NCBI GenBank assembly: GCA_977017575.1
Contig: CDRNVI010000040.1
Location: 496,001 to 560,000, forward strand
Length of the DNA stretch: 64,000 bases
From: Paramoeba atlantica
Lineage: Eukaryota > Protista > Discosea
Direction: 5' to 3'
Part shown: positions 1,658 through 54,633 of the stretch, in pieces
Position numbering within the stretch: position 1 is the first letter of the stretch
Layout: each line of letters opens with the position of its first letter
Notes under the pieces: generated by a model
Database searches by the model: none
Told to the model about the DNA's origin: nothing
The model's input: only the letters and a program-made list of their open reading frames with translations
Program-made: the position numbers and the translations under genes

Positions 1658-2764
1658 ATGAGCTACTCGTCTACCGAGTTACCTCCTTCGCAGACGTCTT
1701 GCACGGAATCCTACAATTGTTCTCCACCAAGTCTTGAACTGGATCATCAAAATATATCCCGCTCCAGACCTCGAAGGCAGCGTCGGTCGCGTTATTCTCG
1801 AATTCCTCTAACGGGGCAAGGAAAAGATACTCGTGAAGCCGCTCCCGCCAATGCGGAATCTTATCCACCAACACCTTATCTTACATCTTACGGCGAGCCT
1901 TTCGAAGATTTAATTTTTCAGCTGCAGCAGGCACAAGATCATGTCGCTCACTTGCAGCAATGCTGCATGGCCTACGAAGCCAAAATTCAGGACCTCGAAT
2001 ATTGCGCTCAACAATCTGCACGAGGTACGAATTCCGCGTCGTTTTCAACTGCTTGTATTTCTCACGCACGGATCGAACCTTCTTGCGAAGATTCGCAGGA
2101 CAAGATGTCTTTGTTCGGTAGGAAAATTAAAAATAACACAGTTTCATCTGTGCGACTTACCGAAACAGGTAATCACGATATAAAAAATAGCATACAGCGC
2201 ATGAAGAAATCTACTCTTGATGCTGCCACAGACGTACTTGGTCTCCCGCAAGCTGTCCCGTTAGAAGATCAAATGGTTTTTCACACCTTGGTTGACCTTG
2301 GAAATCTTCATCCTATCCAAATCAACCTTTATAAAAACGTCAGCCCCATGTTACAAACCCAAGACACCTACGCCCGAGCCATCTTCGAACACTGTGACGA
2401 TGTCTGCAACCTTCTTCCCACCTTGAAACCCAATTTTACCTTTGGTTATGAGGTCTCTCAATCCTGGTACAGCGCGGACGACTCCCTCTCCGAGGACAGT
2501 CTCGAGGACTTTGCATCCTTCTCCCTACGCGGCAGCGCACCGCCTGCCCACCCCTCACAGTTTCCCTCACAGTCGCCTTCCTCTGCGGCCGTGAGATCCC
2601 ACGTACGCAGAGTTCCCTCCACCCCTACTGGTTCCTCCGGGCACAGCTCTTTTCGCAGTGCCGTGACACGCCGACTGACACGCGGGCTCGAGGAGCGCGG
2701 GGGGAGGTTTGACACAAAGATACCCTCCCCGAGTATCTCCTTTCGTCGCGCGCATCATAAGTGA
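1658..2764 (+). CDS. hypothetical protein (short coiled coil, Ser/Arg/Pro-rich C-terminus)
   Basis: 368-aa ATG ORF on the same strand as all other genes; no family motif recognised. Confidence 0.6.
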   Translation: MSYSSTELPPSQTSCTESYNCSPPSLELDHQNISRSRPRRQRRSRYSRIPLTGQGKDTREAAPANAESYPPTPYLTSYGEPFEDLIFQLQQAQDHVAHLQQCCMAYEAKIQDLEYCAQQSARGTNSASFSTACISHARIEPSCEDSQDKMSLFGRKIKNNTVSSVRLTETGNHDIKNSIQRMKKSTLDAATDVLGLPQAVPLEDQMVFHTLVDLGNLHPIQINLYKNVSPMLQTQDTYARAIFEHCDDVCNLLPTLKPNFTFGYEVSQSWYSADDSLSEDSLEDFASFSLRGSAPPAHPSQFPSQSPSSAAVRSHVRRVPSTPTGSSGHSSFRSAVTRRLTRGLEERGGRFDTKIPSPSISFRRAHHK

Positions 2765-3430
2765 ACGAGATGGAGCCATGGATACGCTCCACGCGTGCGT
2801 GTTGGGGGGGGGGGGGGTAAAAAAGAGGTGACTTTGCTTTTTTTTCTTGGGAATGATACAAGGTGTGAAAAAGAATACAGGATTATCATGTTTTAAAGAC
2901 TTTTCTTTCTTCTGTATAAGGATGTTTGACTTTTTTGAAAAAGGTCACTTATCCTCAGTCATGTTTAAGAACGGAAGTTATGATTGTTGCTCAATATTAA
3001 GTCCAAAAATAACGTGGTAAAGTAACTCTAAATTCATTTTAATTAAATATCTAAGATTTACATGGACAATATGGTGAACTATATTGTTAAGCAAATTTAA
3101 AATTTGTAATGACAAGTAAAGTTAAAGACATTCTAATTTGTGATTTTAAATTAAGTTTGTAAATATGCTTCTCTGTGGAAAATAAGCGTCCTACTGGGAG
3201 TGCTTAAATTGTTTTCATTGGTCAACTTTCGTTGTCTTCAGTAGAATCTCTAACTCTAAGGTGTTTCTTGCAGGATAGATGTACATACACTCTAATTTTT
3301 TATGAACCCCTTCTTGCCGAATAGCATATTCAGAAAACACGTCGCGTGACCTTATTTTTTTTAAATGTCGTCTTAATTTACTGATCGATACAACATTTCT
3401 TTACATAAAACTATACGTTCCACACACAAA

Positions 3431-4770: not shown

Positions 4771-6516
4771 ATGGTTAGTGCTAAAGATTTTTCGCTGCTA
4801 CGACAGGCCATATCGAAACGGGATTGCGATGCTGCTCTATTGTATCTTCGAAACTGGCTCAGTTCCACATCGAAAGCGCCTTCAACTTTGGTTTCTGACA
4901 TGAAATTTGCCGAAGAAATCACTCTGAAAACAAAAAAGCGGGTAAAAGATCCTGCGCAAGAAGTAATGTTGCCTCCTTCATTAGTTTCAGCAGCCCTGCA
5001 TTTATGTACATCTACGAACCGATGGTCGGACGCCAGTTCATTGTTACAAGATCTACTAAGGGTACATGATTTTCAATGGAATTCCTCAATTTTAGCCAAG
5101 AGCATTACTATCTTATGTAGAAATAGCGCTTTCTCCGGGGGTAACTCCGGCTATTCGTCTTCAGAAAACGAGGAGAAAAAGGGATTATCTCGAGAAAATG
5201 CTTTACCGCACGTGAAAAATGAATCCTGCTTAAAAAACGTGTTAGCAATATTGAAGAAGGCCCATTTTGGAAGTCTTGGGGAGGGTTCTGCTATTCAAAG
5301 ACGGCATTTTGCTCCTTTTTTTGAAATTTGCAGCAGCTTTGCTTTGCTGAACGAGGCGCGTGCATTCGCACGAAAGGCTAGCGTTGTTTTGGATCAAGTA
5401 GACTACGCTTGCATGCTCAAACTTCCTTTTGCGGGTCAGTTGCTTCACGGCATTCTTCAAGATATGAGAGAAGACATCCCATTGGTTTCGCATGACTTTG
5501 TCGATGCCGTTTTCTACGCGTGTAGAGATTCTGAGCCTGACAAGAACATTAAGCCAAATGCATCCGAGTGCACCATACGAGATGAGGTGGAAGTGGTGTT
5601 TCCCGCAGCATATGAACAAAAAGATACCGATATCCTTTGTAGGAGGCCATCCGAACAACATTTCGGTTACTGTAGTCATTGCAAAGGCGAATTACAGTTA
5701 TATCCTTTCAGTGAGGAGTATCGTGCACAACTTCTGGGCGATATTGAGAAAACATTAATACCTGCAGAACTTCCTAATGAGGTCATTTCCAAACTCAGGA
5801 AAATGTGCGATGATCGGGTCATTCGAGTGATTATTGATGGTGCCAACGTAGGCTATTGCGGTCTCTCAGCTTGGGGTGCTGAATCGATTGAATCTCAAAA
5901 CTTTCGAGAGAAGGAAGAGAACGTGATTGAAAAAATTCAGGACGAAGATCGTAAGTGGAGAAAGCGCGCTGCAACAAAAAAGGTTCCTGCTCGATTGGAG
6001 CATATTCAAGCAGTGTGTGAGGCGATAGAAAATGCGAAGCTGGGAACTCCTCTTATTGTTTTTCACGAACGTCACACGGCCAAAGAGGCCCTTCAGCCCC
6101 AGTATCAGGAGATGGTACGCAATTGGCGTGAAAGGGGCATTTTATACACCTCGCCCGAGGGGGTTTGCGACGATTATTTTTGGCTCTATGCTGCTGTGTA
6201 CCTTAGCCAGCCGAGTCGTCCTGCATATGTGATTACTAATGATAAAATGAGAGATCACCACTACGCGATGCTTTCTCAAAAATCCTTTTTGAGATGGAAA
6301 CAGACGAGTCAAATCTTTTTTGGGATTTTAGCTCCTGGGATGAGAGCGCGGTTGCAAGTGCCTCGTTCGTACTCTTTTTGCATGCAATATGAGGAAAGCA
6401 ACAGGCATTGGCATCTACCGTACCGCGATCGAGTAGATGACCAAATAAGATGGTTATGCGTTGAAATACCACAGCAGACGAGTGATACAACAAAAAATGA
6501 CACACCCGCTGTGTAG
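4771..6516 (+). CDS. PRORP: protein-only RNase P (PPR region + NYN nuclease)
   Basis: CSHC zinc ligands, [31 protein letters not shown] and a C-terminal WHLP. First ATG is at 4771 (the track starts at GTG 4747). Confidence 0.92.
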
Positions 6517-6820
6517 GAATTTCTTAAAATCCTTGCACATCTGTTGCCCATTACGTTCCTCTAATCACTTTTTACTGATTATTACGTTGTTTGGTCTTTG
6601 TAGGCTTCCAATTTTGCGATCACATCATAGCAAAGTGAACATGTACAGTGCTTCGAGTACACTGCGAGTTTCTAGTACAATGAGATTCTATGCAGTTTTC
6701 AAAGCACTAAATCACACACAGTACTTGAAATATAAGTATCTCATACATCACAGTTTGAAAATCCTAAGTGCTCTTTTTCTTGTTTATCGGGGTGCTTACG
6801 TCAATGTAACTTCACAAAGA

Positions 6821-7888
6821 ATGGACGAACAAAGTAGAGAACCGGGGGTTGCCCTTATTACTGGGATATCGGGTCAGGATGGCTCCTACCTCGCCGAGCT
6901 TCTCCTCGAGAAAGGCTACACCGTCCATGGCCTTGTACGCCGCACCTCCACCTTTTCCACCTCCCGCATCAACCACATCTACACCCACCCCCGTCTCCAC
7001 CTCCACTACGGCGACCTCACCGACACCCTCCCCCTCCTCCACCTCATCACCTCCCTCCGCCCCACCGAGATCTACAACCTCGGCGCCCAGAGCCACGTCA
7101 AAGTCAGCTTCGACCTCCCCGAGCACACCGCCAACGTCAACGCCCTCGGCTGCCTCCGTCTCCTCGAGGCCCTCCGTCTCTCCCCCCTCCCCCCCGCCCA
7201 CTGCCGGTTCTACCAAGCCTCCACCTCCGAGCTCTACGGGCAACCCACCGAGAGCCCCCAAACCGAGTCCACCCCCTTCCGCCCCCGCTCCCCCTACGCC
7301 TGCGCGAAGCTCCACGCGTACTGGTCCACGGTCGTCCACCGCCACGCCTACGGGCTGTTCGCCTGCAACGGGGTTCTGTTCAACCACGAGTCCCCGCGCC
7401 GCGGGGCGACCTTTGTCACGCGCAAGATCGTCCGCGCCGCGGTGCGTATCGCCGCGGGGCGACAACACGAGCTGTGTCTGGGGAATCTGGACGCGAAAAG
7501 GGACTGGGGGCACGCGAAGGACTATGTGGAGGGGATGTGGCGGATGCTGCAGCAGGAGGGGCCGGGGGATTACGTACTCGCGACGGGGAGGCAGTACGCG
7601 GTGCGGGAGTTTTGTGTGGCGGTGTTTGAAAGGGTGGGGATAGGGCTGCGGTGGGAGGGGGAGGGGGTGGGTGAGGTGGGGGTGGAGACGGGGGGGACAG
7701 GGCGGGTACTGGTTCGGGTCACGGCGAAGTATTTTCGACCGGCTGAGGTGGATTCGCTTCTGGGTGATCCGTCTCATGCGGAGAAAACATTGGGCTGGAA
7801 GCGAAATTTCGATTTTTATGGTTTGGTTGACGATATGGTGTCGAGTGAGATTGCCATAGAGAAATCGGGTCAAGACTGTTGGTCTTAG
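6821..7888 (+). CDS. GMD: GDP-mannose 4,6-dehydratase
   Basis: [74 protein letters not shown] 6821 sits just before the Rossmann motif; the upstream part of the 6461 ORF overlaps PRORP and is probably not coding. Confidence 0.97.
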
Positions 7889-8330: not shown

Positions 8331-8999
8331 ATGAGCTCTGATTTTGAAGATAAATTCTATCTTTCAAAGATTCTGCTGGAGGCGCACTCTCAGCAAGTAG
8401 AGCAGGCGGTTTCAAATTCAAAATCGGCGTCTCACTCCCTCGATTCACAACTATTAACGTATCTTTCGGCACGTGGACGTGAATGCGAAGAGAAACTGAA
8501 CGAAGTTGCAGAAATATTACCAACAATGGTGAGTGGAGCTCAGTCAAGAATACAGTGGACAGCAAGGCTTACCATGTTACACGAGGAATGCGAAAGGTTG
8601 CGCGGTATGCTGCAAAGCTTGGAAATTAAGAAACGTAAAAACGACAGAATTATACGCAGCAGAGAGGCCTTTAGACTCTCGGAACAAGATAAAAAGGTCT
8701 TGGAGGATTCATACGGGCCCGAATCGGAACTTCTCTCCGAGTATGACTCTCTTGTCCACACACAAAAGGAAGTTCAATCAATGACTTCCGAAAGTATTGC
8801 GGTACTCAATGCATTAAAGTCGCAGCGTGAGGGAATTCTTCACTCGCAAGACAGACTCAGTAAACTTTCCGCGTCATCTAGTTTTTCAACACAACTCCTC
8901 CGCAATATTATGAGTACGATACATTTAGATCGTATTTTCTTGTATTTCGGAATGATAATCATCACTCTTTTATTGCTTTTCATTTACATGAGAACTTAG
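8331..8999 (+). CDS. Qb-SNARE, Bos1/membrin (GOSR2)-like
   Basis: 222 aa, helical N-terminus, SNARE heptads (AVLNALKSQREGIL), C-terminal TM anchor DRIFLYFGMIIITLLLLFIYM. Confidence 0.8.
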   Translation: MSSDFEDKFYLSKILLEAHSQQVEQAVSNSKSASHSLDSQLLTYLSARGRECEEKLNEVAEILPTMVSGAQSRIQWTARLTMLHEECERLRGMLQSLEIKKRKNDRIIRSREAFRLSEQDKKVLEDSYGPESELLSEYDSLVHTQKEVQSMTSESIAVLNALKSQREGILHSQDRLSKLSASSSFSTQLLRNIMSTIHLDRIFLYFGMIIITLLLLFIYMRT

Positions 9000-22016: not shown

Positions 22017-22892
22017 AAGGGGTCTTTTTGGGTCCGAAGAATGGTGTGGTTGGGGTCGCATCCCCCACCCAATACGTTTGATAGCCTCGAATACATGCGC
22101 ACGAGTGATTTCCCACACGCAAAAGGCGAACTTAGAGGGGTGACTCCTATCCAGGCGCTTCTAGGCGCTTCCAGTGAACTTCTATGGTGTTCGGACTTGG
22201 TAATTTGAGGATAGCAACGTAAACCCCCCTATGGGGGGACATGGGAGGCACACTTTATTTTTATTTTCTAAAGTCTTGTCCAAGGAAGTGGCAGATTAGG
22301 CCGAGGCTATCGTTCGGTCCCAGTAATAAGGCATTTTGCACTGCGTCAACGAGAGATGAATGTCGTAAATTGTTGTTGTTTTTGTTGATAACAAGAGCGC
22401 CCGCATTACCCTCATGCAAGCGCCGCAAGTACCACTCCGGCTCTCGGGCTCCGCCCGAGTACGGGGACGCAAGGCTCTCCTAGGTCGCTTCACCAGCGTG
22501 TGTGTGTCTGTGCGTGTGATTCAGGCCAGTTGGCTCCGAAGAGCTGTGGCTTCCTACTTCACGCGTAGGTCGCGCTACCGGTTCTCCACGCACAAGCGTG
22601 ATCTTCTAACACGAGAGCATCGAAACCCCCAATCATACAAGAAGACACCGGACTTTCCTCACGGGCGGTCAGGATGGCGGCACATGGGTGAAGGAGGGTG
22701 CGAAGAGGGCGGGGCAGGGGGGCGAATTGAATGGCCAGGAGGCTGACCAAGAGTGGGGGCGAAGAGGGCAGGCCAAGACGAGGAGGGCAGGCGAGGAAGG
22801 CGGCCAGGGGGCGCCGAGGAGAGCGGCGAAGAGCAATGTGTGGGCAGGCTCACCAGTGACAATGAACACTCCATAGTTAGCCTACCATGTGT

Positions 22893-36431: not shown

Positions 36432-36668
36432 AACTGTATTCCGTTGTATTTGCAACGCCTAAAATTAGTTCTTTAAAGATTTTCAAATCTTTATACATGG
36501 GTGACCAATAGAGTACACTAAAGTATAAGCACCAAAAAATCTGTAACCAAGAAAAATATCAAGCAAAAACTTCCCAGCAAGCATCACTCTACACAACAAC
36601 AAAAACAAAAAACAAAAAACAAAAAAAAAATTACTCGTCCTTACGAAACCTTCCCTACCCCCTCCCCC

Positions 36669-37895
36669 ATGCCCCTCTCCCCTCTCCACCCCCCTCCTCT
36701 CCTCCCCTCCCCCTTCCACGCCCCCCGACGCTTCCTCCACCTCTACGAGGGGGTCGCCAAGCGACTCCTCTCCCCCGTCGCCGCGGTCCAGAACGGGTTC
36801 GTGTGCCCCACGGTGGCCCACGCGGCCCGGGCCGGGGCGCGTCTCCCCGCGGGCCGTGCCGTCGTCAAGGCCCACGTGCTGGCCGGGGGCCGCGGCAAGG
36901 GGGTGTTCACCCACGGGCTCAAAGGGGGGGTCCACCTGTGTGCCTCGCGGGACCAGGTCGCGGGGGTCGCGAAAGCGATGCTGGGCCACACCCTGGTGAC
37001 GAGCCAGACCGGGCCGGGGGGGTGTGTGGTGCGGGAGGTTTTCGTGGCGGAGTGCTTGGAGTATGAAAGGGAGTACTATGTGGCGATTACCCTGGAGGCG
37101 TCCGCAGGGGGGGCGGTGCTGTTGGTGTCGGCGGCGGGTGGGGTGGAGGTGGAGAAGGGGTGTCCGGGGGAGGTGGTGAGGGTGGGGATTGCGTACGACA
37201 CGGGGTTGAGTTTGGAAAAGGCTCAGGAGGTGGCGCAGAAATTAGGCATGAAATCACAGGCGGCGCAGTTTTTTGTGGATCTTTATGAATTCAGCAGGTC
37301 TAATGATGCGCTGTTGGTGGAAATTAACCCTTTTGTGGAGCTGTCTGGGGGGAGAGGGTACGCCTGTGTGGATGCCAAGATTACTATAGACGATAACGCC
37401 CTTTTTCGTCACAAAGCTCTTAGCGAAGAATGGTGCCGAGAAGTTCTTGATCCTCGAGAGGCAGAGGCTCGCAAATGGAATATTAATTATATTGGTCTTG
37501 ACGGAGATGTCGGCTGTCTTGTCAATGGCGCAGGATTGGCGATGGCAACAATGGACACCATTCACCTTTTCGGTGGAACCCCTGCTAATTTTCTTGATAT
37601 TGGTGGATCTGCTGACGCAGAGCAGGTTAACGCGGCGCTTCAATTAATTCAAAAAGATCCTCGCGTTAAAGTTATTCTCATTAATATTTTTGGGGGGATT
37701 ATGAAATGTGACACAATTGCGCAAGGCGTCGTGCAGGCGTGTAAGGCCGTCACCCCTCGTGTGCCTCTTGTGGTCAGGCTCTCAGGCACCAATCAAGATC
37801 TGGGCATACAAATTTTGGCCGAAAGTGGCTTGAAAATTGAATCAGCCACCGACTTGTCTGACGCAGCCGAAAAAACTATGAAATTCTTGAAATAG
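36669..37895 (+). CDS. succinyl-CoA ligase beta subunit
   Basis: VVKAHVLAGGRGKG, EREYYVAI, LVEINPF, DAKITIDDNALFRH, GCLVNGAGLAMATMD, PANFLDIGG, NIFGGIMKCD, VRLSGTN. Confidence 0.95.
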   Translation: MPLSPLHPPPLLPSPFHAPRRFLHLYEGVAKRLLSPVAAVQNGFVCPTVAHAARAGARLPAGRAVVKAHVLAGGRGKGVFTHGLKGGVHLCASRDQVAGVAKAMLGHTLVTSQTGPGGCVVREVFVAECLEYEREYYVAITLEASAGGAVLLVSAAGGVEVEKGCPGEVVRVGIAYDTGLSLEKAQEVAQKLGMKSQAAQFFVDLYEFSRSNDALLVEINPFVELSGGRGYACVDAKITIDDNALFRHKALSEEWCREVLDPREAEARKWNINYIGLDGDVGCLVNGAGLAMATMDTIHLFGGTPANFLDIGGSADAEQVNAALQLIQKDPRVKVILINIFGGIMKCDTIAQGVVQACKAVTPRVPLVVRLSGTNQDLGIQILAESGLKIESATDLSDAAEKTMKFLK

Positions 37896-47547: not shown

Positions 47548-48714
47548 ATGCACTCCTCCCGACTTCTTTCCGCGTTACAGACCTATGCCACGCTTCCCCC
47601 CTCGGATGTCTTCCCCCTCCCCCTCGTAAAGTGGGCCCAGCGACACAACTGTAACTTCTCCTCCGGCTTGCGACAGGCCTATGTCACCCTGGGCTACGCC
47701 GCCGCCGTAGACCCCAGCATTGACCCCCCTGAGTCACAAAACAACACCCCCGGCGATGCTACAACCGGGTCCTCTCCTCCACCCCCCCTCCCCCTCTTCT
47801 CCCCCACTCTCCTTCGTGCCGTCCAGGAATCCAACTACCAACTCGCACACTGCTCCGACTGGGTAGAACACATCGCCGTGACCCAATTCGAATACGCTCA
47901 TCGAATACCCCATCCCCCCGTGGCCGTGACGCACCCCTCTACATTGGAAACAGAAAAACAAGAACAAAACGAAAAAGAACAAAAACAAGAACAAGAAGAA
48001 CAAAAACAAAAAGAACAAAAACAAAAAGAACAAGAACAAAAAGAACAAGAACAAAAGCAAGAAGAACAAAAGGAACAAGAACCCTCCACCCCTTCCACCC
48101 CCCCTATGAACCCCTCCCCTACGTGGACCGCCATCCCCTCCTCTGAGGTCGACACGGGAAAATTCGACATCCCGATTCACCCCACCAATGCCTCTTCCCC
48201 CCTCTTCCCCTCCTCCATACCCCCCAGCGGGCAGCACGACCCCACCGGTCCCCTCCTCTCCCTCCGCATCCGTGCCGTGCTCACGGTACGGGTCAACCCC
48301 GCACGGTTCCTCCCGCACTACCGCTGGTGTCACCAACGGATTCACGTCCCCGAGGGGGGGGCGATCGGGGGGGCTGTCGCGGGGACAGAGCCCGGCAGCG
48401 TCGGGGAGGGGGAGAGCTCTGTGCCGTTACGGCACCAGGCCGCGACCTATGCCGCGACCCGCCCCTGGGCGCGGGGGTTGTTAAAGGTGTTTCGCTCGGT
48501 GACGTTGGATCCGGTGATGCGGACCATGGTGCCGTATGTTCCGGCGAAGATGACCGTGATGGAGATGTGTCTGGGTCCGGTGGGGAGAGGGGAGAGGGGG
48601 GGTCCGTCGTGTGCGGTGGGTGCGGAAATGAATTGGAGAGTGACGGCTCTTAGGCATGCGGAGGAGGTGGCGTATCCGGTTTGGGTACAGCGGAGTAAGC
48701 AGGAGGGTTTGTAG
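47548..48714 (+). CDS. hypothetical protein with an E/Q/K low-complexity insert
   Basis: 388-aa ATG ORF; caa/gaa/aaa repeat at about 47950-48080; spans a C-to-G island. Confidence 0.6.
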   Translation: MHSSRLLSALQTYATLPPSDVFPLPLVKWAQRHNCNFSSGLRQAYVTLGYAAAVDPSIDPPESQNNTPGDATTGSSPPPPLPLFSPTLLRAVQESNYQLAHCSDWVEHIAVTQFEYAHRIPHPPVAVTHPSTLETEKQEQNEKEQKQEQEEQKQKEQKQKEQEQKEQEQKQEEQKEQEPSTPSTPPMNPSPTWTAIPSSEVDTGKFDIPIHPTNASSPLFPSSIPPSGQHDPTGPLLSLRIRAVLTVRVNPARFLPHYRWCHQRIHVPEGGAIGGAVAGTEPGSVGEGESSVPLRHQAATYAATRPWARGLLKVFRSVTLDPVMRTMVPYVPAKMTVMEMCLGPVGRGERGGPSCAVGAEMNWRVTALRHAEEVAYPVWVQRSKQEGL

Positions 48715-48933
48715 TCCGAGGTTTGTAGTCCGGGTGTGTTCGTTGGGGTTAGTATAGTAATTGTAGCACTTGTAGCATTGTTCAATTTTGGCAAATAATG
48801 TGGAAGGTAAACATGACAAGGGTGTGGGAATGTAGACATCGGGTTCACTAAAACGATTCAGAATAGTCTATGGGAAACTAATCGCTGGTAGTCTTTTTAC
48901 CTTCTAACATCCTTGTTTCCAAAATTTATCCGT

Positions 48934-49848: not shown

Positions 49849-50904
49849 ATGTTCAGCGTTCGTCCCCTGGTCTCTCGAAACTTGAGAGATCTTTGCAACA
49901 TCGTAAGCACAGACGATTACGTCATCTCTTTGCTCAACAAGTCCAAGCTACGTTCCTTTGCGGAGTTTATCTCCTGGCCCGGGGCGGGGGCGAGAGAGAT
50001 TTACCGATACGTGCTTACCCTCCCAAAAGAGCAGCGTGCCCTACACGCGGTCTTTGGACGAGAGGGGGTTCCGTTGGACTTTTGTGCTGATCTCGACCTT
50101 CCGTTGTCTCCGTCAGATCCGCATGCGCAGCAACAAGGACAGCTTCTTATGGAGGCCACCTGCGACGAAACAGAGCGTACGCTGCAACTCGCCTACGGGA
50201 AGCAATTCTCGAAACTGGTCGTCCTGCAGAGTTTCGCCGTGAACAAACTTTCCTATCACATACATGCCCGGATCGCAGAGGATGTGGCATTCCAGGACAT
50301 CTCGGATTTGTGCAATTTCTCTCGCATTGTGGCGCGTTCCCTCAAGCTACGCTGGAAGAAGGAAGTTCTTGATTCCGGAATTTACCGTACTGGGGGACAG
50401 CTGCGGTTGTACGACTGTGTAAAGAGTATTGGTGATGACGCCACTCTGGACAAGCTTGCGTTGAAGAGACCACTACACTGGAATCCCTGCCCCGACGACC
50501 TTTTTGAGCTCTCCTTAGTCACCCGCCCGCGTTCTGTTGTGCGCGAGCTAATCACGTCCAAGTCCACAGCCCCGGTCGTTAAAATGGAAGATAGCTACGA
50601 TAACTGTATGGATTTTGTAATTAAGACTGTCCCTCGGCTGGAAGAATCCGTAGCACACGCTTACAGTTCTTGGATTCAAATCGGGCTGGCACTGAAAAGT
50701 TTGCACCTGGTTGCACAGTCAAGACCCGATGGGGTGTTATTCGATTTTGAGGATCTTTTTCACACGTTTAGTGCAAAGTCGCCGAAGTACTCACGCGGAG
50801 ATTGTGATAGACAGTGGGCCAGAATGAAAGTGAGGGATGCTGACTGGTTGCGAGCTGTACGGTGTGTTCGGCGATTTTGTAAGAAAAATGTTGACATGCC
50901 ATGA
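49849..50904 (+). CDS. AEP primase with a C-terminal PriCT-2 domain (kinetoplastid mitochondrial primase PRI1/PRI2-like)
   Basis: DFCADLDL (DxD), SYHIH, DSGIYRTGGQLRL; C-terminal YSSWIQIGLAL...FSAKSPKY...CDRQW; presequence-like MFSVRPLVSR. Confidence 0.8.
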   Translation: MFSVRPLVSRNLRDLCNIVSTDDYVISLLNKSKLRSFAEFISWPGAGAREIYRYVLTLPKEQRALHAVFGREGVPLDFCADLDLPLSPSDPHAQQQGQLLMEATCDETERTLQLAYGKQFSKLVVLQSFAVNKLSYHIHARIAEDVAFQDISDLCNFSRIVARSLKLRWKKEVLDSGIYRTGGQLRLYDCVKSIGDDATLDKLALKRPLHWNPCPDDLFELSLVTRPRSVVRELITSKSTAPVVKMEDSYDNCMDFVIKTVPRLEESVAHAYSSWIQIGLALKSLHLVAQSRPDGVLFDFEDLFHTFSAKSPKYSRGDCDRQWARMKVRDADWLRAVRCVRRFCKKNVDMP

Positions 50905-51218
50905 CGTAGGTTTATGGCTTTCAATTCCGTACCTTCAGTCTTCTGTTTTTCAGAACAACTTCACACTTTTAGAAATTTTTCATTTTTCACAAATTTAATT
51001 TAGAACGCAACGTTCAATCACGTTTCGTATCCTTCAGTTTCTGTTATTCCTATGGTCTCTCAACACATCACCTAACTCACTAAAAAACATTTACTGTCAT
51101 AAAAACATTCATTTCTTTGAAGTAGTCTACGAGATGTACATCTTTCTACTTCTGCAACACGTGCACCACCTATTCGCCAAAATACAAAACCACTCGTTTA
51201 TTCTCCTCACCCCCATTT

Positions 51219-52898
51219 ATGTCTTCCCACTGCCTCATCCTTGAGCGACCCAAACCCGGAGCAGACCTCCATCACGTCCTGTTCGTCGACCTCGACAACG
51301 TTGCCTTCTTTCGCGGTGTAGACGAGCGGTTCAGCACCCCCCGTCCCATCGTGCCCCCTCGTAGCTTTGTGTTCTGTATCGTCGCCGCGGACACCATGCT
51401 AAACGTCGCCATTGGCAAGAGTCCGGGCTACTTCCACCTTGTCCAGCGTCACGGTATCGAGATCTGTCCCCTCGGGAGCTGGCGTCCCCCGTTCGTTCTT
51501 CCCCCCGGGGAGGCCAGCAACACCATGAGCCCTTGCCAGGCCCTGCAGCGTCTCGTGCGCTGGGCCCACACCGTGCTGGACCCCGCGATCTCGTTCACCC
51601 TGCTGTACTTCCCGGAGGATAGCGCCTCCGAGACCTCACTGCAGGACTATCTCCAGGGAAGGGACGTGGAGACGATACGACCAGCTCGACACCACTGGTG
51701 GGATCGCGTCGCCTCCCGGCTGGCACGCCGTAAGCCACAGCCCCCTAAGGTGAAGACATCGGAACCATCTCCTCGTAGAGAAGGTGAGGAGGAGGCAGAA
51801 TCAGGGGTTGAAAATCCGATTGAGAACAGGGAGCGGATAGAACCGAGCGCACTCACGGAGGAGGCGTTGCGGTCATGGGGTATTGGAATGGCAGAGCCGG
51901 AGCTGAACGGTGATGCGGGAGAGGGGAAGGAGAAAGGAGAACTTTTTCGGCAGGAAAGTAGGAAGGTGGAAGATAGATGTATCTTAGATACATCTGAGGT
52001 GGTGAAGGAGAGAAGTTTTTCTGTCGAGCCAACATGTGACATTGAGGTGCCGAAGACAGCGGGGGACAAGTTGAGTACCACAGAGCGTCCGACTGTGCTG
52101 GAGCCCGTAAAACAAGTACCTGAACGTGCTTTACCTCCTACAGAGGATGTGGCGACCACGAATACAAAGGATCCGCACATTGCGGAGACTTCTTCGCACC
52201 GAAAACCGTACCGCGAGGTGCCAAAACGAAGCAAAAAGAAAGTAAAGGAACCAGTTCCTGTGGAGTCCTACAACCCCGTAACTTCGCTCCTTCTTAACAT
52301 GAGTGAACCGGAGACATCTCGATCCAGAAAGCGTCGGCAACACCCCGAACTCGCCACGATGGACTCTTTTCGGGCCAACGACATGTTCCCCTCGGAGCAG
52401 CGTGATCTCTCTCCAATAGAAAAGGGTACGACTCAGGAGATACATCCAGGGCCTATAGATAAACATTCTTCACCACAGTACCAGGGGCGTGATGCTCTGC
52501 GTTCTTCTACACATCATCCTCATGCGCACCAACATCGACATCGGCATCACCACCACCATCATCATCATCATGAACGCAGAAGTCATCATACAAGGGAGCA
52601 ATGTCCCACTCACGACCATCCTATTCAATCCAAAGAACATAAAGGTTTTCCTGCGAGAGATGCAGAACGGCACAGAGACGCACGGAAACACAGAGCCCAT
52701 ACCCATAACGAGTCTGATTCTGACTCGCTTAGCAGCGCAGAGGCTTCCGACATGAGTTCTGACTTTAGTTCCTCAGCTTCTCGGCAATCCTCGCTTTCCC
52801 GATCACTTAGTTCACTTAGCTCGGATTTGACAGCTTCTTCGATCTGTTCGAATTCCCTTCGCACCAAATTGATCGCGGCGACAAAGAAAAAATACTAG
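51219..52898 (+). CDS. N-terminal PIN-like (ZNF451-type) domain with a long disordered, His- and Ser-rich tail
   Basis: HVLFVDLDNVAFF motif near the N-terminus; HQHRHRHHHHHHHHE tract; poly-Ser C-terminus. Confidence 0.6.
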   Translation: MSSHCLILERPKPGADLHHVLFVDLDNVAFFRGVDERFSTPRPIVPPRSFVFCIVAADTMLNVAIGKSPGYFHLVQRHGIEICPLGSWRPPFVLPPGEASNTMSPCQALQRLVRWAHTVLDPAISFTLLYFPEDSASETSLQDYLQGRDVETIRPARHHWWDRVASRLARRKPQPPKVKTSEPSPRREGEEEAESGVENPIENRERIEPSALTEEALRSWGIGMAEPELNGDAGEGKEKGELFRQESRKVEDRCILDTSEVVKERSFSVEPTCDIEVPKTAGDKLSTTERPTVLEPVKQVPERALPPTEDVATTNTKDPHIAETSSHRKPYREVPKRSKKKVKEPVPVESYNPVTSLLLNMSEPETSRSRKRRQHPELATMDSFRANDMFPSEQRDLSPIEKGTTQEIHPGPIDKHSSPQYQGRDALRSSTHHPHAHQHRHRHHHHHHHHHERRSHHTREQCPTHDHPIQSKEHKGFPARDAERHRDARKHRAHTHNESDSDSLSSAEASDMSSDFSSSASRQSSLSRSLSSLSSDLTASSICSNSLRTKLIAATKKKY

Positions 52899-53275
52899 AC
52901 GTTCTGAATGGCGTGACAGACTTTTAGGTACGGAGGTTGTTTCGTACACTGTTTGTCAAGAAGTTTTGTCATCTAGCTCAAGAGAGAGGGAGATCTACGT
53001 CTTCTCAGTTTTCCTACAAACTAAATCTATTTTTGAACGCAAAAATTATCTGTGCTTTAGTAGTCCAAGCTTATAGCTCCATATGGTGCCCTATTTTTAC
53101 TAAGTTTTGGCATATTGACTAACATTATACATTATCTATTTCCTTTCCTTGAATAGAGAAGACCATTTCTTGAATGTTTAATTCTTTCTCCTTCACAAAA
53201 TAAAGGTTTATTAAACAAATTTAAATATACCAATTTCATTTTTTCGCTCCCCTCCGCCCTCCTCCCCCCCTCCCC

Positions 53276-54376
53276 ATGCATCGTACCTTCTTCCGCTTCC
53301 TCTACCGCTTCACCCCACCCCATCTCCGAGACCCCAACCCTTTACCATCCAGTTACCCACACGCCCTTGCCCTCCTTCCCCACTCCCCCTCACCCTCCCC
53401 TACCCCCTCCTCCCCTTCCCCCACACAACCCTCCCCCACCCCCTCCTTACCCTCATCCTCCTCCCCCTCCTCTACCGCCTTCACCTTATCCCACCCCTCT
53501 CCCACCCCCACCACCACCACGGATTCCACTCTCCCCGTTGTTTCTGTCCCCTCCAACGCCTTCATCCTACAAGATCCTCCACAACACAAACCCGAACACA
53601 ACCCTCAACACAACCCCCAGCACAATCTCCAACACAACCCCCAACCCAGCACGCAACACAATCTCCAACACAGAGCACAACACAACTCCCAACACAGTAC
53701 GCAACACACCCCCCAACACAGATCCCAGCACAGCAGGCAACACAACCCCCAGCACAGTCCCCAACACAAATCCCAACACAACCCTCAACGGACAACACAG
53801 CACCGTTCACAACGAAGCACACAACACAGTCCCCCACACCACTCCCCACTGAGCACCCAACACAGTCCCCAACACAGTCCCCCACACAGTCCCCCACACA
53901 ACCTACAGCATCGTCCCCCCCACAGCTCCCCCCACAGCCCCGACCCCTCCCCCCTCGACGCGCTCCCCCTCCCCCTCTCCCCGGCCTCCCAGGCCCAGGT
54001 CGCCCGCCTGGTCGCGGCGTACCGCGTGTTCTGGGACCACATCCGGTTCCGCAAGGCCTGGGCCGTCCCCCCCTTCACCTACGACGAGGTGCAGCCCGAG
54101 CTCTCCCGTGCCGCGGAGTACGTGGTGCGGGTCCGGCGGTACCTCGACGGGGTGAGCCCCGGGATGAAGATGCGTATGCTCGACGGGGCCGCGCAGGGGT
54201 TCCTGCGCTCCCGGCGAAGGGAGCAGGTGGTGGGGGACCGGGGGGGGTTTGTACGGGGGTTGGTCCACCACACGTTAAGGGACGCCACGGGGTATGTGGA
54301 GGGGCTGAGTGAGGGGGTGGTGGAGGGGTTGCTGAGGAGGGTGAGGGAGGGGGAGGGGGGGAGAGGGGAGGGGTAG
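53276..54376 (+). CDS. hypothetical protein with Pro/Ser and QH(N/S)P low-complexity repeats, presequence-like N-terminus
   Basis: MHRTFFRFLYRF leader; about 25 QHxP-like tetrapeptides; ordered C-terminal block ARLVAAYRVFWDHIRFRKAW... Confidence 0.6.
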   Translation: MHRTFFRFLYRFTPPHLRDPNPLPSSYPHALALLPHSPSPSPTPSSPSPTQPSPTPSLPSSSSPSSTAFTLSHPSPTPTTTTDSTLPVVSVPSNAFILQDPPQHKPEHNPQHNPQHNLQHNPQPSTQHNLQHRAQHNSQHSTQHTPQHRSQHSRQHNPQHSPQHKSQHNPQRTTQHRSQRSTQHSPPHHSPLSTQHSPQHSPPHSPPHNLQHRPPHSSPHSPDPSPLDALPLPLSPASQAQVARLVAAYRVFWDHIRFRKAWAVPPFTYDEVQPELSRAAEYVVRVRRYLDGVSPGMKMRMLDGAAQGFLRSRRREQVVGDRGGFVRGLVHHTLRDATGYVEGLSEGVVEGLLRRVREGEGGRGEG

Positions 54377-54633
54377 AGGGGGGGTGGCTGGCTTGCGGGT
54401 GTATGGTGGAAAGAAATAGAGTGTAGGAGGGAAAGAATAGAAACGGATTTTTTATAGGGTATTTATGGTAGGATAAGTTTTACTTTGAAGAATGACCCAT
54501 TTTAGCATTTTTAATGTTCTAGTTTTCTTGTACGCTTACTTGCTTCTTTTCCAGTATTATCACGCCGCATTTTTCTTTATACGCTCACAAAATATATTCG
54601 AGTACTTCACACTCGTATCCCTTTTTGTTTGTG

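What the first reader, a model, noticed from the sequence alone, without database searches (positions are those of the whole stretch)
6880..7750. GMD flips its synonymous codon endings mid-gene
Seen: from about 6880 to 7320 nearly every codon ends in C (CTC, GGC, GCC, ACC, CGC, TAC, TGC). From about 7440 to 7740 four-fold sites end in G (CTG, GGG, GCG, ACG, CGG) and two-fold sites shift toward T (TAT, TGT, AAT, GAT, TTT). The last ~130 bp revert to AT-rich. The conserved enzyme sequence acts as an internal control, showing the effect is at the DNA level. The two halves could also pair into a long intramolecular mRNA or ssDNA foldback (inference).
Basis: seen in the sequence. Interest (0 to 1): 0.75.

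Follow-up and report, generated by a model that had tools for sequence, protein, structure and literature searches.

The report
Mirror-skewed GC island rewriting GMD gene
An intact sugar-nucleotide enzyme gene (GDP-mannose 4,6-dehydratase) of a kinetoplastid-like protist lies in a 0.9-kb GC-rich patch that is almost pure C at silent sites in its first half and almost pure G in its second, one of several such patches nearby, and this looks like the scar of a two-sided, strand-specific DNA mutation process that I could not find described.

Summary
In the GMD gene (6821-7888, +), third codon positions are C:G = 147:32 left of about 7436 and 16:88 right of it (Fisher p 2.5e-29; 0 of 100,000 permutations). 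Four other GMD genes, including GC3-rich ones, show no flip.

The effect is at the DNA level:
- Five or six more islands in this window have the same C-to-G polarity.
- Some extend past start or stop codons.
- In GMD the bias has also replaced conserved residues in its own direction.

The foldback idea is not supported. Composition-preserving shuffles reproduce about 94-97% of the folding energy and all of the long-range pairing.

New here: in the G-rich arms, two-fold C/T sites stay at the genome background while A/G sites go to G. The C-rich arms show the mirror pattern, less cleanly. The force therefore pushes toward G on the strand running 5'->3' away from the centre. It is not a plain AT-to-GC push, so GC-biased gene conversion alone does not fit.

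My best reading, by inference only, is repeated single-strand exposure of that strand with cytosine inserted opposite damaged sites.

The scan has already noted this phenomenon many times elsewhere in this genome.

The parts
6821..7888 (+). GDP-mannose 4,6-dehydratase (GMD) coding sequence, 355 aa, intact
   Evidence: Pfam PF16363 E 8.9e-135 over profile positions 1-332 of 332. 61-65% identity to kinetoplastid and other GMDs. 131 of 139 columns invariant in 17 orthologues are kept, including the GxxGxxG motif, the STSE motif and YxxxK.
6880..7300 (.). C-rich arm of the island (+ strand C-rich, - strand G-rich)
   Evidence: Third positions are 13-20 C per 20 codons. In 6900-7300 the four-fold sites are C 77, T 4, G 2, A 1. 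GC skew reaches -0.8.
7300..7500 (.). Transition zone with the skew change point at 7436-7438; both C and G are high and A/T are nearly absent at silent sites
   Evidence: CUSUM minimum at 7436 for third positions and at 7438 for all bases. C3/G3 per 20 codons runs 13/7, 11/7, 8/8. CpG observed/expected is 1.27.
7500..7750 (.). G-rich arm of the island (+ strand G-rich)
   Evidence: Four-fold sites are G 40, A 4, T 3, C 2. Two-fold A/G sites are G 15: A 1, but two-fold C/T sites are C 5: T 7. GC skew reaches +0.82.
7751..7888 (+). 3' end of the GMD CDS outside the GC island (GC 0.48), still with G3 > C3
   Evidence: Third positions in 7741-7885 are T 19, G 18, A 6, C 5.
7632..7706 (+). Three canonical G-quadruplex motifs on the + strand in the G-rich arm
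   Evidence: Regex scan. 18 of the window's 22 such motifs lie in the islands, always on the strand that leaves the centre 5'->3'.
7182..7199 (-). Canonical G-quadruplex motif on the - strand in the C-rich arm
6988..7006 (.). Left arm of the only unusual inverted match (19 nt, 18 of 19 complementary to 7676-7694)
   Evidence: pair I4. Reached by 0-1 of 200-300 block shuffles. The other four islands have no counterpart.
7676..7694 (.). Right arm of that inverted match
36640..37350 (.). Second island of the same polarity (centre about 36875). It starts about 30 nt upstream of the start codon of succinyl-CoA ligase beta and ends mid-gene.
   Evidence: Pfam ATP-grasp_2 and Ligase_CoA.
47548..48760 (.). 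Island of the same polarity (centre about 48351) over ORF 47548-48714. An A-rich insert at about 47920-48100 splits the C-rich arm.
   Evidence: The ORF has no Pfam or Atlas relative.
51200..52000 (.). Weaker island of the same polarity (centre about 51774) over the first half of ORF 51219-52898
53240..54420 (.). Strongest island (centre about 54107, skew -0.89 to +0.81). It runs about 35 nt before the ATG and about 45 nt past the stop of ORF 53276-54376.
   Evidence: The ORF has no Pfam or Atlas relative.
2300..2840 (.). Weak island (centre about 2681) at the 3' end of ORF 1658-2764; its short G-rich part lies past the stop codon
22400..22850 (.). Weak island-like stretch (GC 0.55-0.62, skew about 0 to +0.36) with no long ORF
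   Evidence: Not followed further.

Best explanation
The gene is an ordinary GMD under purifying selection. It happens to lie in one of this genome's recurrent ~1-kb 'mirror-skew' GC islands.

Shown here: the island is the footprint of a DNA-level, two-sided, strand-asymmetric substitution drive around a ~200-bp central zone. On each side, the strand that runs 5'->3' away from the centre is driven toward G from any other base. Its complement is driven toward C. Where only a C/T choice is silent on that strand, nothing happens. Selection holds the catalytic core, but the drive has fixed about 30 residue changes at conserved sites.

Inferred: that outward-running strand is repeatedly exposed or damaged as single-stranded DNA on both sides of a fixed site. 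This is the geometry of the non-template strands of divergent R-loops, or of the lagging-strand templates of an initiation bubble. Base loss on that strand is then bypassed by a Rev1/Pol zeta-type polymerase that inserts C, which turns any damaged base into G. Because G-rich displaced strands favour R-loops and G-quadruplexes, the process could feed on itself and run to saturation in some genes and not in others.
For: - The flip and its significance.
- Specific to this copy: four other GMD genes show no flip.
- Recurrence with one polarity: all six GC-rich switch points in the window are C->G. G->C changes occur only at island edges.
- DNA level: islands cross start and stop codons.
- Residue changes at conserved GMD sites: in the C arm, 24 base changes go to C and 5 away from C. 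In the G arm, 7 go to G and 2 away from G. Transversions are included (A>C 9, G>C 8, T>G 4).
- Strand specificity, strict two-fold families pooled over islands: in G arms A/G sites are 80% G but C/T sites are 43% C, against a background of 38% (p 2.4e-6; not different from background, p 0.5). In C arms C/T sites are 87% C against 53% G at A/G sites (p 3e-8). GMD plus SCS-beta alone give p 0.02 and 0.0008.
- Pooled four-fold sites on the outward strand, my sum: G 72%, C 11%, T 9%, A 8%. All three other bases are lost about equally.
- G4 motifs sit on the outward strand.
- Polarity equals that of E. coli and human origins and of transcribed strands (PMC2817419).
- In yeast and metazoans Rev1/Pol zeta insert C opposite abasic sites. 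This gives T>G and C>G on the damaged strand, and T>G rises on the non-transcribed strand when R-loops accumulate (PMC6063437).
- Rev1 and Pol zeta homologues exist in trypanosomatids (PMC12578213).
Against: - No direct evidence for single-stranded DNA, R-loops, antisense transcripts or initiation at the centres.
- All genes here lie in one unidirectional array, where internal divergent transcription is not expected.
- Leishmania initiation sites are AT-rich and mildly depleted in CDS (PMC12890776).
- Classical replication and transcription skews also carry a T>A skew. Silent sites here show none.
- The arms are not perfect mirrors. If the doubtful ORF 53276 is left out, A/G sites in C arms are 72% G against 35% background. 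A weaker general AT-to-GC component, or a sense-strand A>G effect, therefore coexists.
- C arms are longer than G arms in 4 of 5 islands.
- No shared sequence motif at the centres.
Confidence: 0.4

Rival explanations
1. Stable meiotic (or mitotic) double-strand-break hotspots lie inside genes. GC-biased gene conversion over the ~0.5-kb resected and heteroduplex tracts on each side builds the GC island. The opposite strand polarity of heteroduplex on the two sides gives the skew.
For: - GC enrichment strong enough to override selection on conserved residues is typical of runaway gBGC, as in gerbil genes (PMC6573468 and PMC7403616, listed).
- Arm lengths of 0.2-0.9 kb are in the range of resection tracts (my own knowledge).
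- The gradual 250-bp transition fits a hotspot of finite width.
- In C arms, A/G two-fold sites are moderately G-enriched, so some general AT-to-GC push exists.
- Perkinsela keeps Spo11, DMC1 and HOP1 (PMC5601477).
- Earlier notes of this scan favoured this reading.
Against: - A strand-symmetric AT-to-GC drive that takes four-fold sites above 90% G+C should also take two-fold C/T sites to C in the G arms. They stay at background: 43% against 38%, p 0.5.
- After a break, the surviving single strands are the ones ending 3' at the centre. Deamination or abasic-site bypass on them predicts G-rich left and C-rich right, the opposite of what is seen (inference from the standard resection model).
- Islands have flat GC plateaus with sharp edges, not a peak decaying from the centre.
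Confidence: 0.2
2. The C-rich and G-rich halves are kept by selection because they pair into a long mRNA (or single-stranded DNA) foldback with a function.
For: - The CDS folds at -475 kcal/mol, with half of its pairs joining the two halves.
- Folded alone, the two halves give only -160 and -144 kcal/mol.
- z is -2.1 to -3.6 against shuffles.
- There is one 19-nt 18/19 inverted match.
Against: - Shuffles that keep local composition reproduce about 94-97% of the energy and all the long-range pairing, and one shuffle beats the native fold.
- Four other islands have no inverted match above chance and z of -0.3 to -3.6.
- Islands cover different parts of genes and spill into non-coding DNA.
- The bias destroys conserved residues, which is costly for a structural role.
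Confidence: 0.05
3. The pattern is not a process in this genome. It reflects a chimeric or horizontally acquired GC-rich gene, or an assembly or base-calling artefact.
For: The gene's GC (0.63) is far above the window's (about 0.41-0.43).
Against: - Both halves are equally similar to the same set of kinetoplastid and other GMDs.
- GC-rich GMDs elsewhere have balanced C3/G3.
- The first 60 and last 138 nt of the same ORF have ordinary composition.
- The reading frame is intact over 1068 nt and matches the Pfam model end to end.
- Several unrelated loci share the pattern.
Confidence: 0.03

Closest known systems
GC-skew sign switch at bidirectional replication origins (bacteria; human origins and CpG islands: Touchon 2005 and Polak & Arndt 2009, as described in PMC2817419)
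   Same: Same polarity: negative skew upstream and positive downstream on the 5'->3' strand. Centred on a point. Attributed to strand-specific mutation.
   Different: Known cases are weak (a few percent), extend over tens to hundreds of kb, come with a T>A skew, and do not raise GC. Here skew is +/-0.6-0.9, confined to about 1 kb, sits at GC 0.65-0.72, shows no T/A skew at silent sites, and lies inside coding sequence.
GC-skewed CpG-island promoters that form R-loops (Ginno et al. 2013, PMC3787257), and, from my own knowledge, immunoglobulin switch regions
   Same: About 1-kb GC-rich islands with a G-rich non-template strand and G4 potential. The displaced strand is the mutated one. CpG is not depleted (observed/expected about 1).
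   Different: Those sit at promoters or specialised loci. Here the islands lie inside genes of a one-directional gene array, with no known start sites. The skew is near saturation and mirrored on both sides.
Abasic-site bypass by Rev1/Pol zeta in highly transcribed yeast DNA (PMC6063437)
   Same: Gives T>G and C>G on the damaged strand, and more so on the non-transcribed strand when R-loops persist. This matches the 'any base to G on one strand' spectrum inferred.
   Different: That is a laboratory mutation spectrum in repair mutants, not a fixed genomic landscape. No evidence here that this pathway acts.
Runaway GC-biased gene conversion islands (gerbil Pdx1 and ParaHox region, PMC6573468, PMC7403616; bird and dog hotspots from my own knowledge)
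   Same: Local GC enrichment that overrides purifying selection and changes conserved residues.
   Different: gBGC is strand-symmetric AT-to-GC. Here two-fold C/T sites in the G arms are untouched, and each arm is nearly mono-C or mono-G.
[quoted passage not shown]
   Same: Kinetoplastids. Strand-specific G and G4 enrichment on either side of a centre, with two flanking RNA:DNA-hybrid summits.
   Different: Opposite polarity (G and G4 upstream on the + strand). [quoted passage not shown] Enrichment is only 24% against 20%. Leishmania sites are AT-rich and depleted in CDS.
GC3 and CG3-skew gradients along grass genes (PMC2895627)
   Same: Silent-site C versus G preference changes along the coding sequence.
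   Different: Amplitude is about 0.05-0.1 and there is no sign flip inside an island.

Membership tests
GDP-mannose 4,6-dehydratase (short-chain dehydrogenase/reductase fold, Pfam PF16363) | Full-length match to the family profile above the curated cut-off | tested here: met
   449.8 bits against a cut-off of 27, profile positions 1-332 of 332.
GDP-mannose 4,6-dehydratase (short-chain dehydrogenase/reductase fold, Pfam PF16363) | Nucleotide-binding glycine motif and the catalytic Thr/Glu and Tyr-x-x-x-Lys residues are conserved | tested here: met
   G15, G18, G21, S134-T135-S136-E137, Y159 and K163 are in invariant alignment columns. 131 of 139 otherwise invariant columns are kept. Enzyme activity was not tested.
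GC-biased gene conversion island at a recombination hotspot | AT-to-GC enrichment irrespective of strand (both C/T and A/G silent sites go to G+C) | tested here: not met
   In the G arms, A/G sites are 80% G but C/T sites are 43% C, against a background of 38% (p 2.4e-6). In the C arms, 87% against 53% (p 3e-8).
GC-biased gene conversion island at a recombination hotspot | Coincides with a site of elevated recombination or double-strand breaks | not testable with these tools
   No recombination or population data.
Replication-origin skew switch | Skew changes from negative to positive on the 5'->3' strand at the origin | tested here: met
   All six GC-rich switch points are C->G. Polarity is as in E. 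coli and human origins (PMC2817419).
Replication-origin skew switch | Skew persists along the replicon and is accompanied by a T>A skew | tested here: not met
   Skew returns to about 0 within 0.3-0.9 kb of the centre. A and T are about equal at four-fold sites.
Replication-origin skew switch | Resembles mapped kinetoplastid origins (intergenic, A/T-tract flanked, AT-rich, G upstream on the + strand) | tested here: not met
   The islands are intragenic and GC-rich, with G downstream on the + strand, unlike PMC13179062 and PMC12890776.
GC-skewed R-loop-forming island (CpG-island promoter type) | G-rich non-template strand with G4 potential downstream of a start site, mirrored at divergent promoters | tested here: inconclusive
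   Composition and G4 motifs fit, and CpG observed/expected is about 1. No start site, antisense RNA or RNA:DNA hybrid could be tested.
Foldback / inverted-repeat structure (hairpin or cruciform) | Complementarity between the arms beyond what composition gives | tested here: not met
   z is -2.1 to -3.6 for GMD with one shuffle beating the native fold, and -0.3 to -3.6 for five islands. The best inverted match exceeds shuffles only in GMD.

The most novel reading that the evidence does not exclude
A germline, genome-wide, self-reinforcing hypermutation process. At fixed intragenic sites, paired divergent R-loop/G-quadruplex structures (or initiation bubbles) expose one strand on each side. Abasic-site bypass writes G into that strand until silent sites saturate and proteins are rewritten. 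This would resemble immunoglobulin switch-region chemistry turned loose on perhaps one gene in five of a protist.
Probability: 0.2. Interest if true: 0.85.

Novelty: new variant of a known kind. Interest (0 to 1): 0.72.

Why it matters
Strand-asymmetric footprints around origins and promoters are normally faint statistical signals. Here the signal is near saturation, kilobase-sized and inside essential genes, where conserved proteins act as a built-in control.

That makes the underlying process readable gene by gene. One can see which strand is hit, which base changes occur, how far they reach from the centre, and how strongly selection resists.

If the cause is single-strand exposure with C-insertion bypass, this organism would be a natural system for studying R-loop- or initiation-linked mutagenesis and its cost to proteins. 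If it is a form of biased conversion, it would show that conversion can be strand-specific.

In practice, these islands create spurious ORFs on other frames. They distort protein similarity (this GMD is the longest branch among 18 orthologues) and will mislead gene finders, codon-usage measures and tests for horizontal transfer in this genome.

Tried and rejected
There was no test of polymorphism, expression, antisense RNA or assembly support.
- Closest protein hit P0001 (689 bits) is a bacterial GMD with an internal duplication in a capsule-type gene cluster, so it is irrelevant.
- No close relative of this GMD exists in the protein collection (best 65% identity). The one longer contig with an orthologue (L004) shares no neighbouring genes with the window. 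A syntenic comparison of this gene was therefore impossible.
- Chimeric origin is rejected. Both halves are equally distant from all reference groups.
- Centre motif: no k-mer shared beyond what GC-rich DNA gives.
- CpG depletion or methylation decay: CpG observed/expected is about 1.
- 'Islands are bounded by genes': GMD's island lies 60 and 138 nt inside the CDS, and three islands begin within about 35 nt of an ATG. However, two of those ORFs (47548, 53276) have no Pfam or Atlas relative. C-rich or G-rich DNA also makes long ORFs by itself, as shown by the spurious ORFs 6849-7643 (+) and 6812-7873 (-). I do not claim gene-bounding.
- Literature: searches and look-ups in papers on Prokinetoplastina, Perkinsela and free-living kinetoplastid genomes found no mention of such islands. 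This is a limited search, not proof of absence.
- Grass CG3-skew gradients are far too weak to be the same thing.
- Three paper-tool calls failed on term format, and two paper-reading runs likewise.

Full report
**What is there.**
The finding lies in a 355-codon ORF, 6821-7888 on the + strand. It is a full-length GDP-mannose 4,6-dehydratase (Pfam PF16363, E 8.9e-135, profile 1-332 of 332). The longer ORF listed from 6461 is an upstream extension without support. All long ORFs of the window are on the + strand and lack introns. The best named GMD relatives are kinetoplastids: PhM-4, Neobodo, Trypanosoma and Trypanoplasma at 61-63% identity. Neighbours include a protein-only RNase P. This fits the earlier scan notes that call the genome a Perkinsela-like kinetoplastid. 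I did not test the taxon further.

**The observation.**
Window GC is about 0.41-0.43, while the stretch 6880-7750 is 0.65-0.72. Its GC skew runs from -0.8 to +0.8.
- Third codon positions in 6880-7320 are C in 119 of 146 codons.
- In 7440-7740 they are G in 67 of 99 codons.
- The last 48 codons fall to GC 0.48 but keep G3 > C3.
- A cumulative-sum change point lies at 7436. C3:G3 is 147:32 to the left and 16:88 to the right (Fisher p 2.5e-29), and none of 100,000 permutations reaches the observed depth.
- The change is gradual, over about 7300-7550.

Four other GMD genes read as DNA, with GC3 0.69-0.92 and including T. cruzi, have balanced C3 and G3 in every block. High GC3 alone does not give the pattern. 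Two-fold C/T sites in the G-rich arm (5 C: 7 T) are at the genome's usual ratio, 38-39% C. They are not shifted toward T.

**It is a DNA-level, recurrent feature.**
A scan of the window finds the same C-then-G pattern at about 2681 (weak), 36875, 48351, 51774 and 54107, and faintly at 22660.
- All six GC-rich switch points are C->G. G->C changes occur only where an island ends.
- Because the pattern is its own reverse complement, gene orientation cannot explain the polarity.
- Islands run into non-coding DNA. One starts about 30-35 nt before the ATGs at 36669 and 53276, and one runs about 45 nt past the stop at 54376.
- In GMD the island sits 60 nt inside the start and 138 nt inside the stop.
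- I do not endorse 'gene-bounded'. Two ORFs that coincide with islands have no detectable relatives, and the GMD island itself creates spurious ORFs in another frame and on the other strand.

**Effect on the protein.**
Against 17 orthologues (alignment A1), the window's GMD keeps 131 of 139 columns that are invariant in the others. These include the glycine motif, STSE and YxxxK. It is therefore under purifying selection.
- It is nevertheless the most divergent sequence of the set in every part.
- At positions conserved in at least 70% of the others it has 24 private replacements in the C arm and 7 in the G arm.
- The underlying base changes go to C 24 times against 5 away from C in the C arm. 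They go to G 7 times against 2 away from G in the G arm.
- Many are transversions: A>C 9, G>C 8, T>G 4.
- Both halves are equally related to the same reference groups, so a chimera or a transferred gene is not indicated.

**The foldback.**

| Sequence | Energy (kcal/mol) | z |
|---|---|---|
| Native CDS | -475.4 | - |
| Synonymous shuffles, 60-codon blocks | -450.7 +/- 8.6 | -2.9 |
| Synonymous shuffles, 178-codon blocks | -445.0 +/- 8.5 | -3.6 |
| Base shuffles, 60-nt blocks | -453.5 +/- 10.7 | -2.1 |

- The best base shuffle (-484.8) beats the native fold.
- The native fold has 182 of its 363 pairs joining the two halves. Shuffles have as many, 175-190.
- Folded alone, the halves give -160 and -144 kcal/mol.
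- One 19-nt match with 18 of 19 paired (6988-7006 / 7676-7694) is rarer than in shuffles, being reached by 0-1 of 200-300.
- The other four islands have no such match, and their fold z-scores are -0.3 to -3.6.

The capacity to pair is therefore a by-product of composition. A specific selected structure is not supported.

**What kind of force.**
This is the main new result. If the islands were built by a strand-symmetric AT-to-GC push, as in GC-biased gene conversion, both kinds of two-fold silent site should go to G+C. They do not. With strict two-fold families pooled over the islands:

| Arm | A/G sites | C/T sites | p |
|---|---|---|---|
| G arms | 80% G | 43% C (background 38%; difference p 0.5) | 2.4e-6 |
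| C arms | 53% G | 87% C | 3e-8 |

- GMD plus succinyl-CoA ligase alone give p 0.0008 and 0.02.
- Summing the four-fold counts and expressing them on the strand that runs 5'->3' away from the centre gives G 72%, C 11%, T 9%, A 8%.
- So A, T and C are all replaced by G on that strand, while a silent C/T choice on it is left alone.
- The mirror is not perfect. Without the doubtful ORF 53276, A/G sites in C arms are 72% G against 35% background. C arms are also longer than G arms in four of five islands.
- A weaker general GC push, or an effect tied to the direction of transcription, therefore coexists.

**Mechanism (inference).**
'Any base becomes G on one strand' is what abasic-site bypass by Rev1/Pol zeta produces, since C is inserted opposite the lost base.
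- In yeast this gives T>G and C>G, and T>G rises on the non-transcribed strand when R-loops persist (PMC6063437).
- Homologues of both polymerases are listed for trypanosomatids (PMC12578213).
- The strand that becomes G-rich here is the one exposed as lagging-strand template on either side of an origin. It is also the non-template strand of divergent transcription.
- The polarity equals that of E. coli and human origins (PMC2817419).
- After a double-strand break the exposed strands are the opposite ones. Standard single-strand damage would then give G-then-C, not C-then-G.
- Eighteen of the window's 22 canonical G4 motifs lie in the islands, on the G-rich outward strand. This would favour R-loops and could make the process self-reinforcing.

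Several facts count against this reading.
- Mapped T. brucei origins are intergenic and have the opposite G polarity (PMC13179062).
- Leishmania initiation sites are AT-rich (PMC12890776).
- There is no T/A skew at silent sites.
- Nothing is known here about transcripts or hybrids.

I put the general statement, a two-sided strand-specific drive at the DNA level, at high confidence. The specific chemistry and context I put at about 0.3-0.4.

**Comparison with earlier notes and the literature.**
The scan has noted this phenomenon many times on other pieces of this genome; 77 notes hold the search words. Those notes favour recombination hotspots or origins. My two-fold-site test argues against plain biased conversion. 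The published T. brucei topology argues against a simple equation with known kinetoplastid origins. Searches and look-ups in papers on prokinetoplastid and free-living kinetoplastid genomes gave no description of such islands.

**Limits.**
- Only one 64-kb window was available.
- No close relative's DNA for this gene could be found.

Noticed in passing
window 6849-7643 (+) and 6812-7873 (-): Two long ORFs (264 and 353 aa) overlap the GMD gene in another frame and on the opposite strand. They span exactly the island and encode proline-, glycine- or arginine-rich low-complexity strings. They look like by-products of stop-codon-free C-rich or G-rich DNA and would mislead gene callers.
   Followed up: partly
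window 53276-54376 and 47548-48714: Two ORFs are almost exactly coextensive with strong islands. Neither has a Pfam hit or a usable Atlas hit. ORF 53276 shows only weak codon periodicity (C fraction 0.55, 0.45 and 0.61 at positions 1, 2 and 3). It is unclear whether they are heavily rewritten real genes or ORFs created by the islands.
   Followed up: partly
window 47920-48100: An A-rich insert (up to 75% A in 60 nt) splits the C-rich arm of the island at 47548-48760 into two lobes.
   Followed up: no
window 36580-36635: A long A-rich tract (about 55% A, with runs of A interrupted by C) lies directly upstream of the island that starts at the succinyl-CoA ligase beta start codon. The first ~30 codons of that gene, the presumed targeting peptide, are almost only C and T.
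   Followed up: no
window 22400-22850: A weak GC-rich stretch has G-rich DNA on its right side and no long ORF. It may be an island in non-coding DNA.
   Followed up: no
window 49849-50904: ORF with PrimPol-like (Prim-pol family 5) and PriCT_2 domains. It is a primase-polymerase-type gene sitting between islands, with a mildly raised GC3 of 0.57.
   Followed up: no
window islands at 6880-7750, 47548-48760, 51200-52000, 53240-54420: The C-rich arm is longer than the G-rich arm in four of five islands (GMD: 558 vs 312 nt). All genes are on the + strand, so the longer arm is always the upstream one with respect to transcription.
   Followed up: partly
L001 5102-6739: A bacterial GMD of 545 aa carries an internal duplication of its C-terminal ~200 residues. 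It lies in a polysaccharide-synthesis gene cluster (NCBI assembly GCA_029782595.1). It topped the protein search only because it matches twice.
   Followed up: partly
window 4771-6516: The gene just upstream of GMD is a protein-only RNase P (PRORP domain, E 1.7e-25) with ordinary composition. Downstream, 8331-8999 has a weak V-SNARE match. Neither has an island.
   Followed up: no
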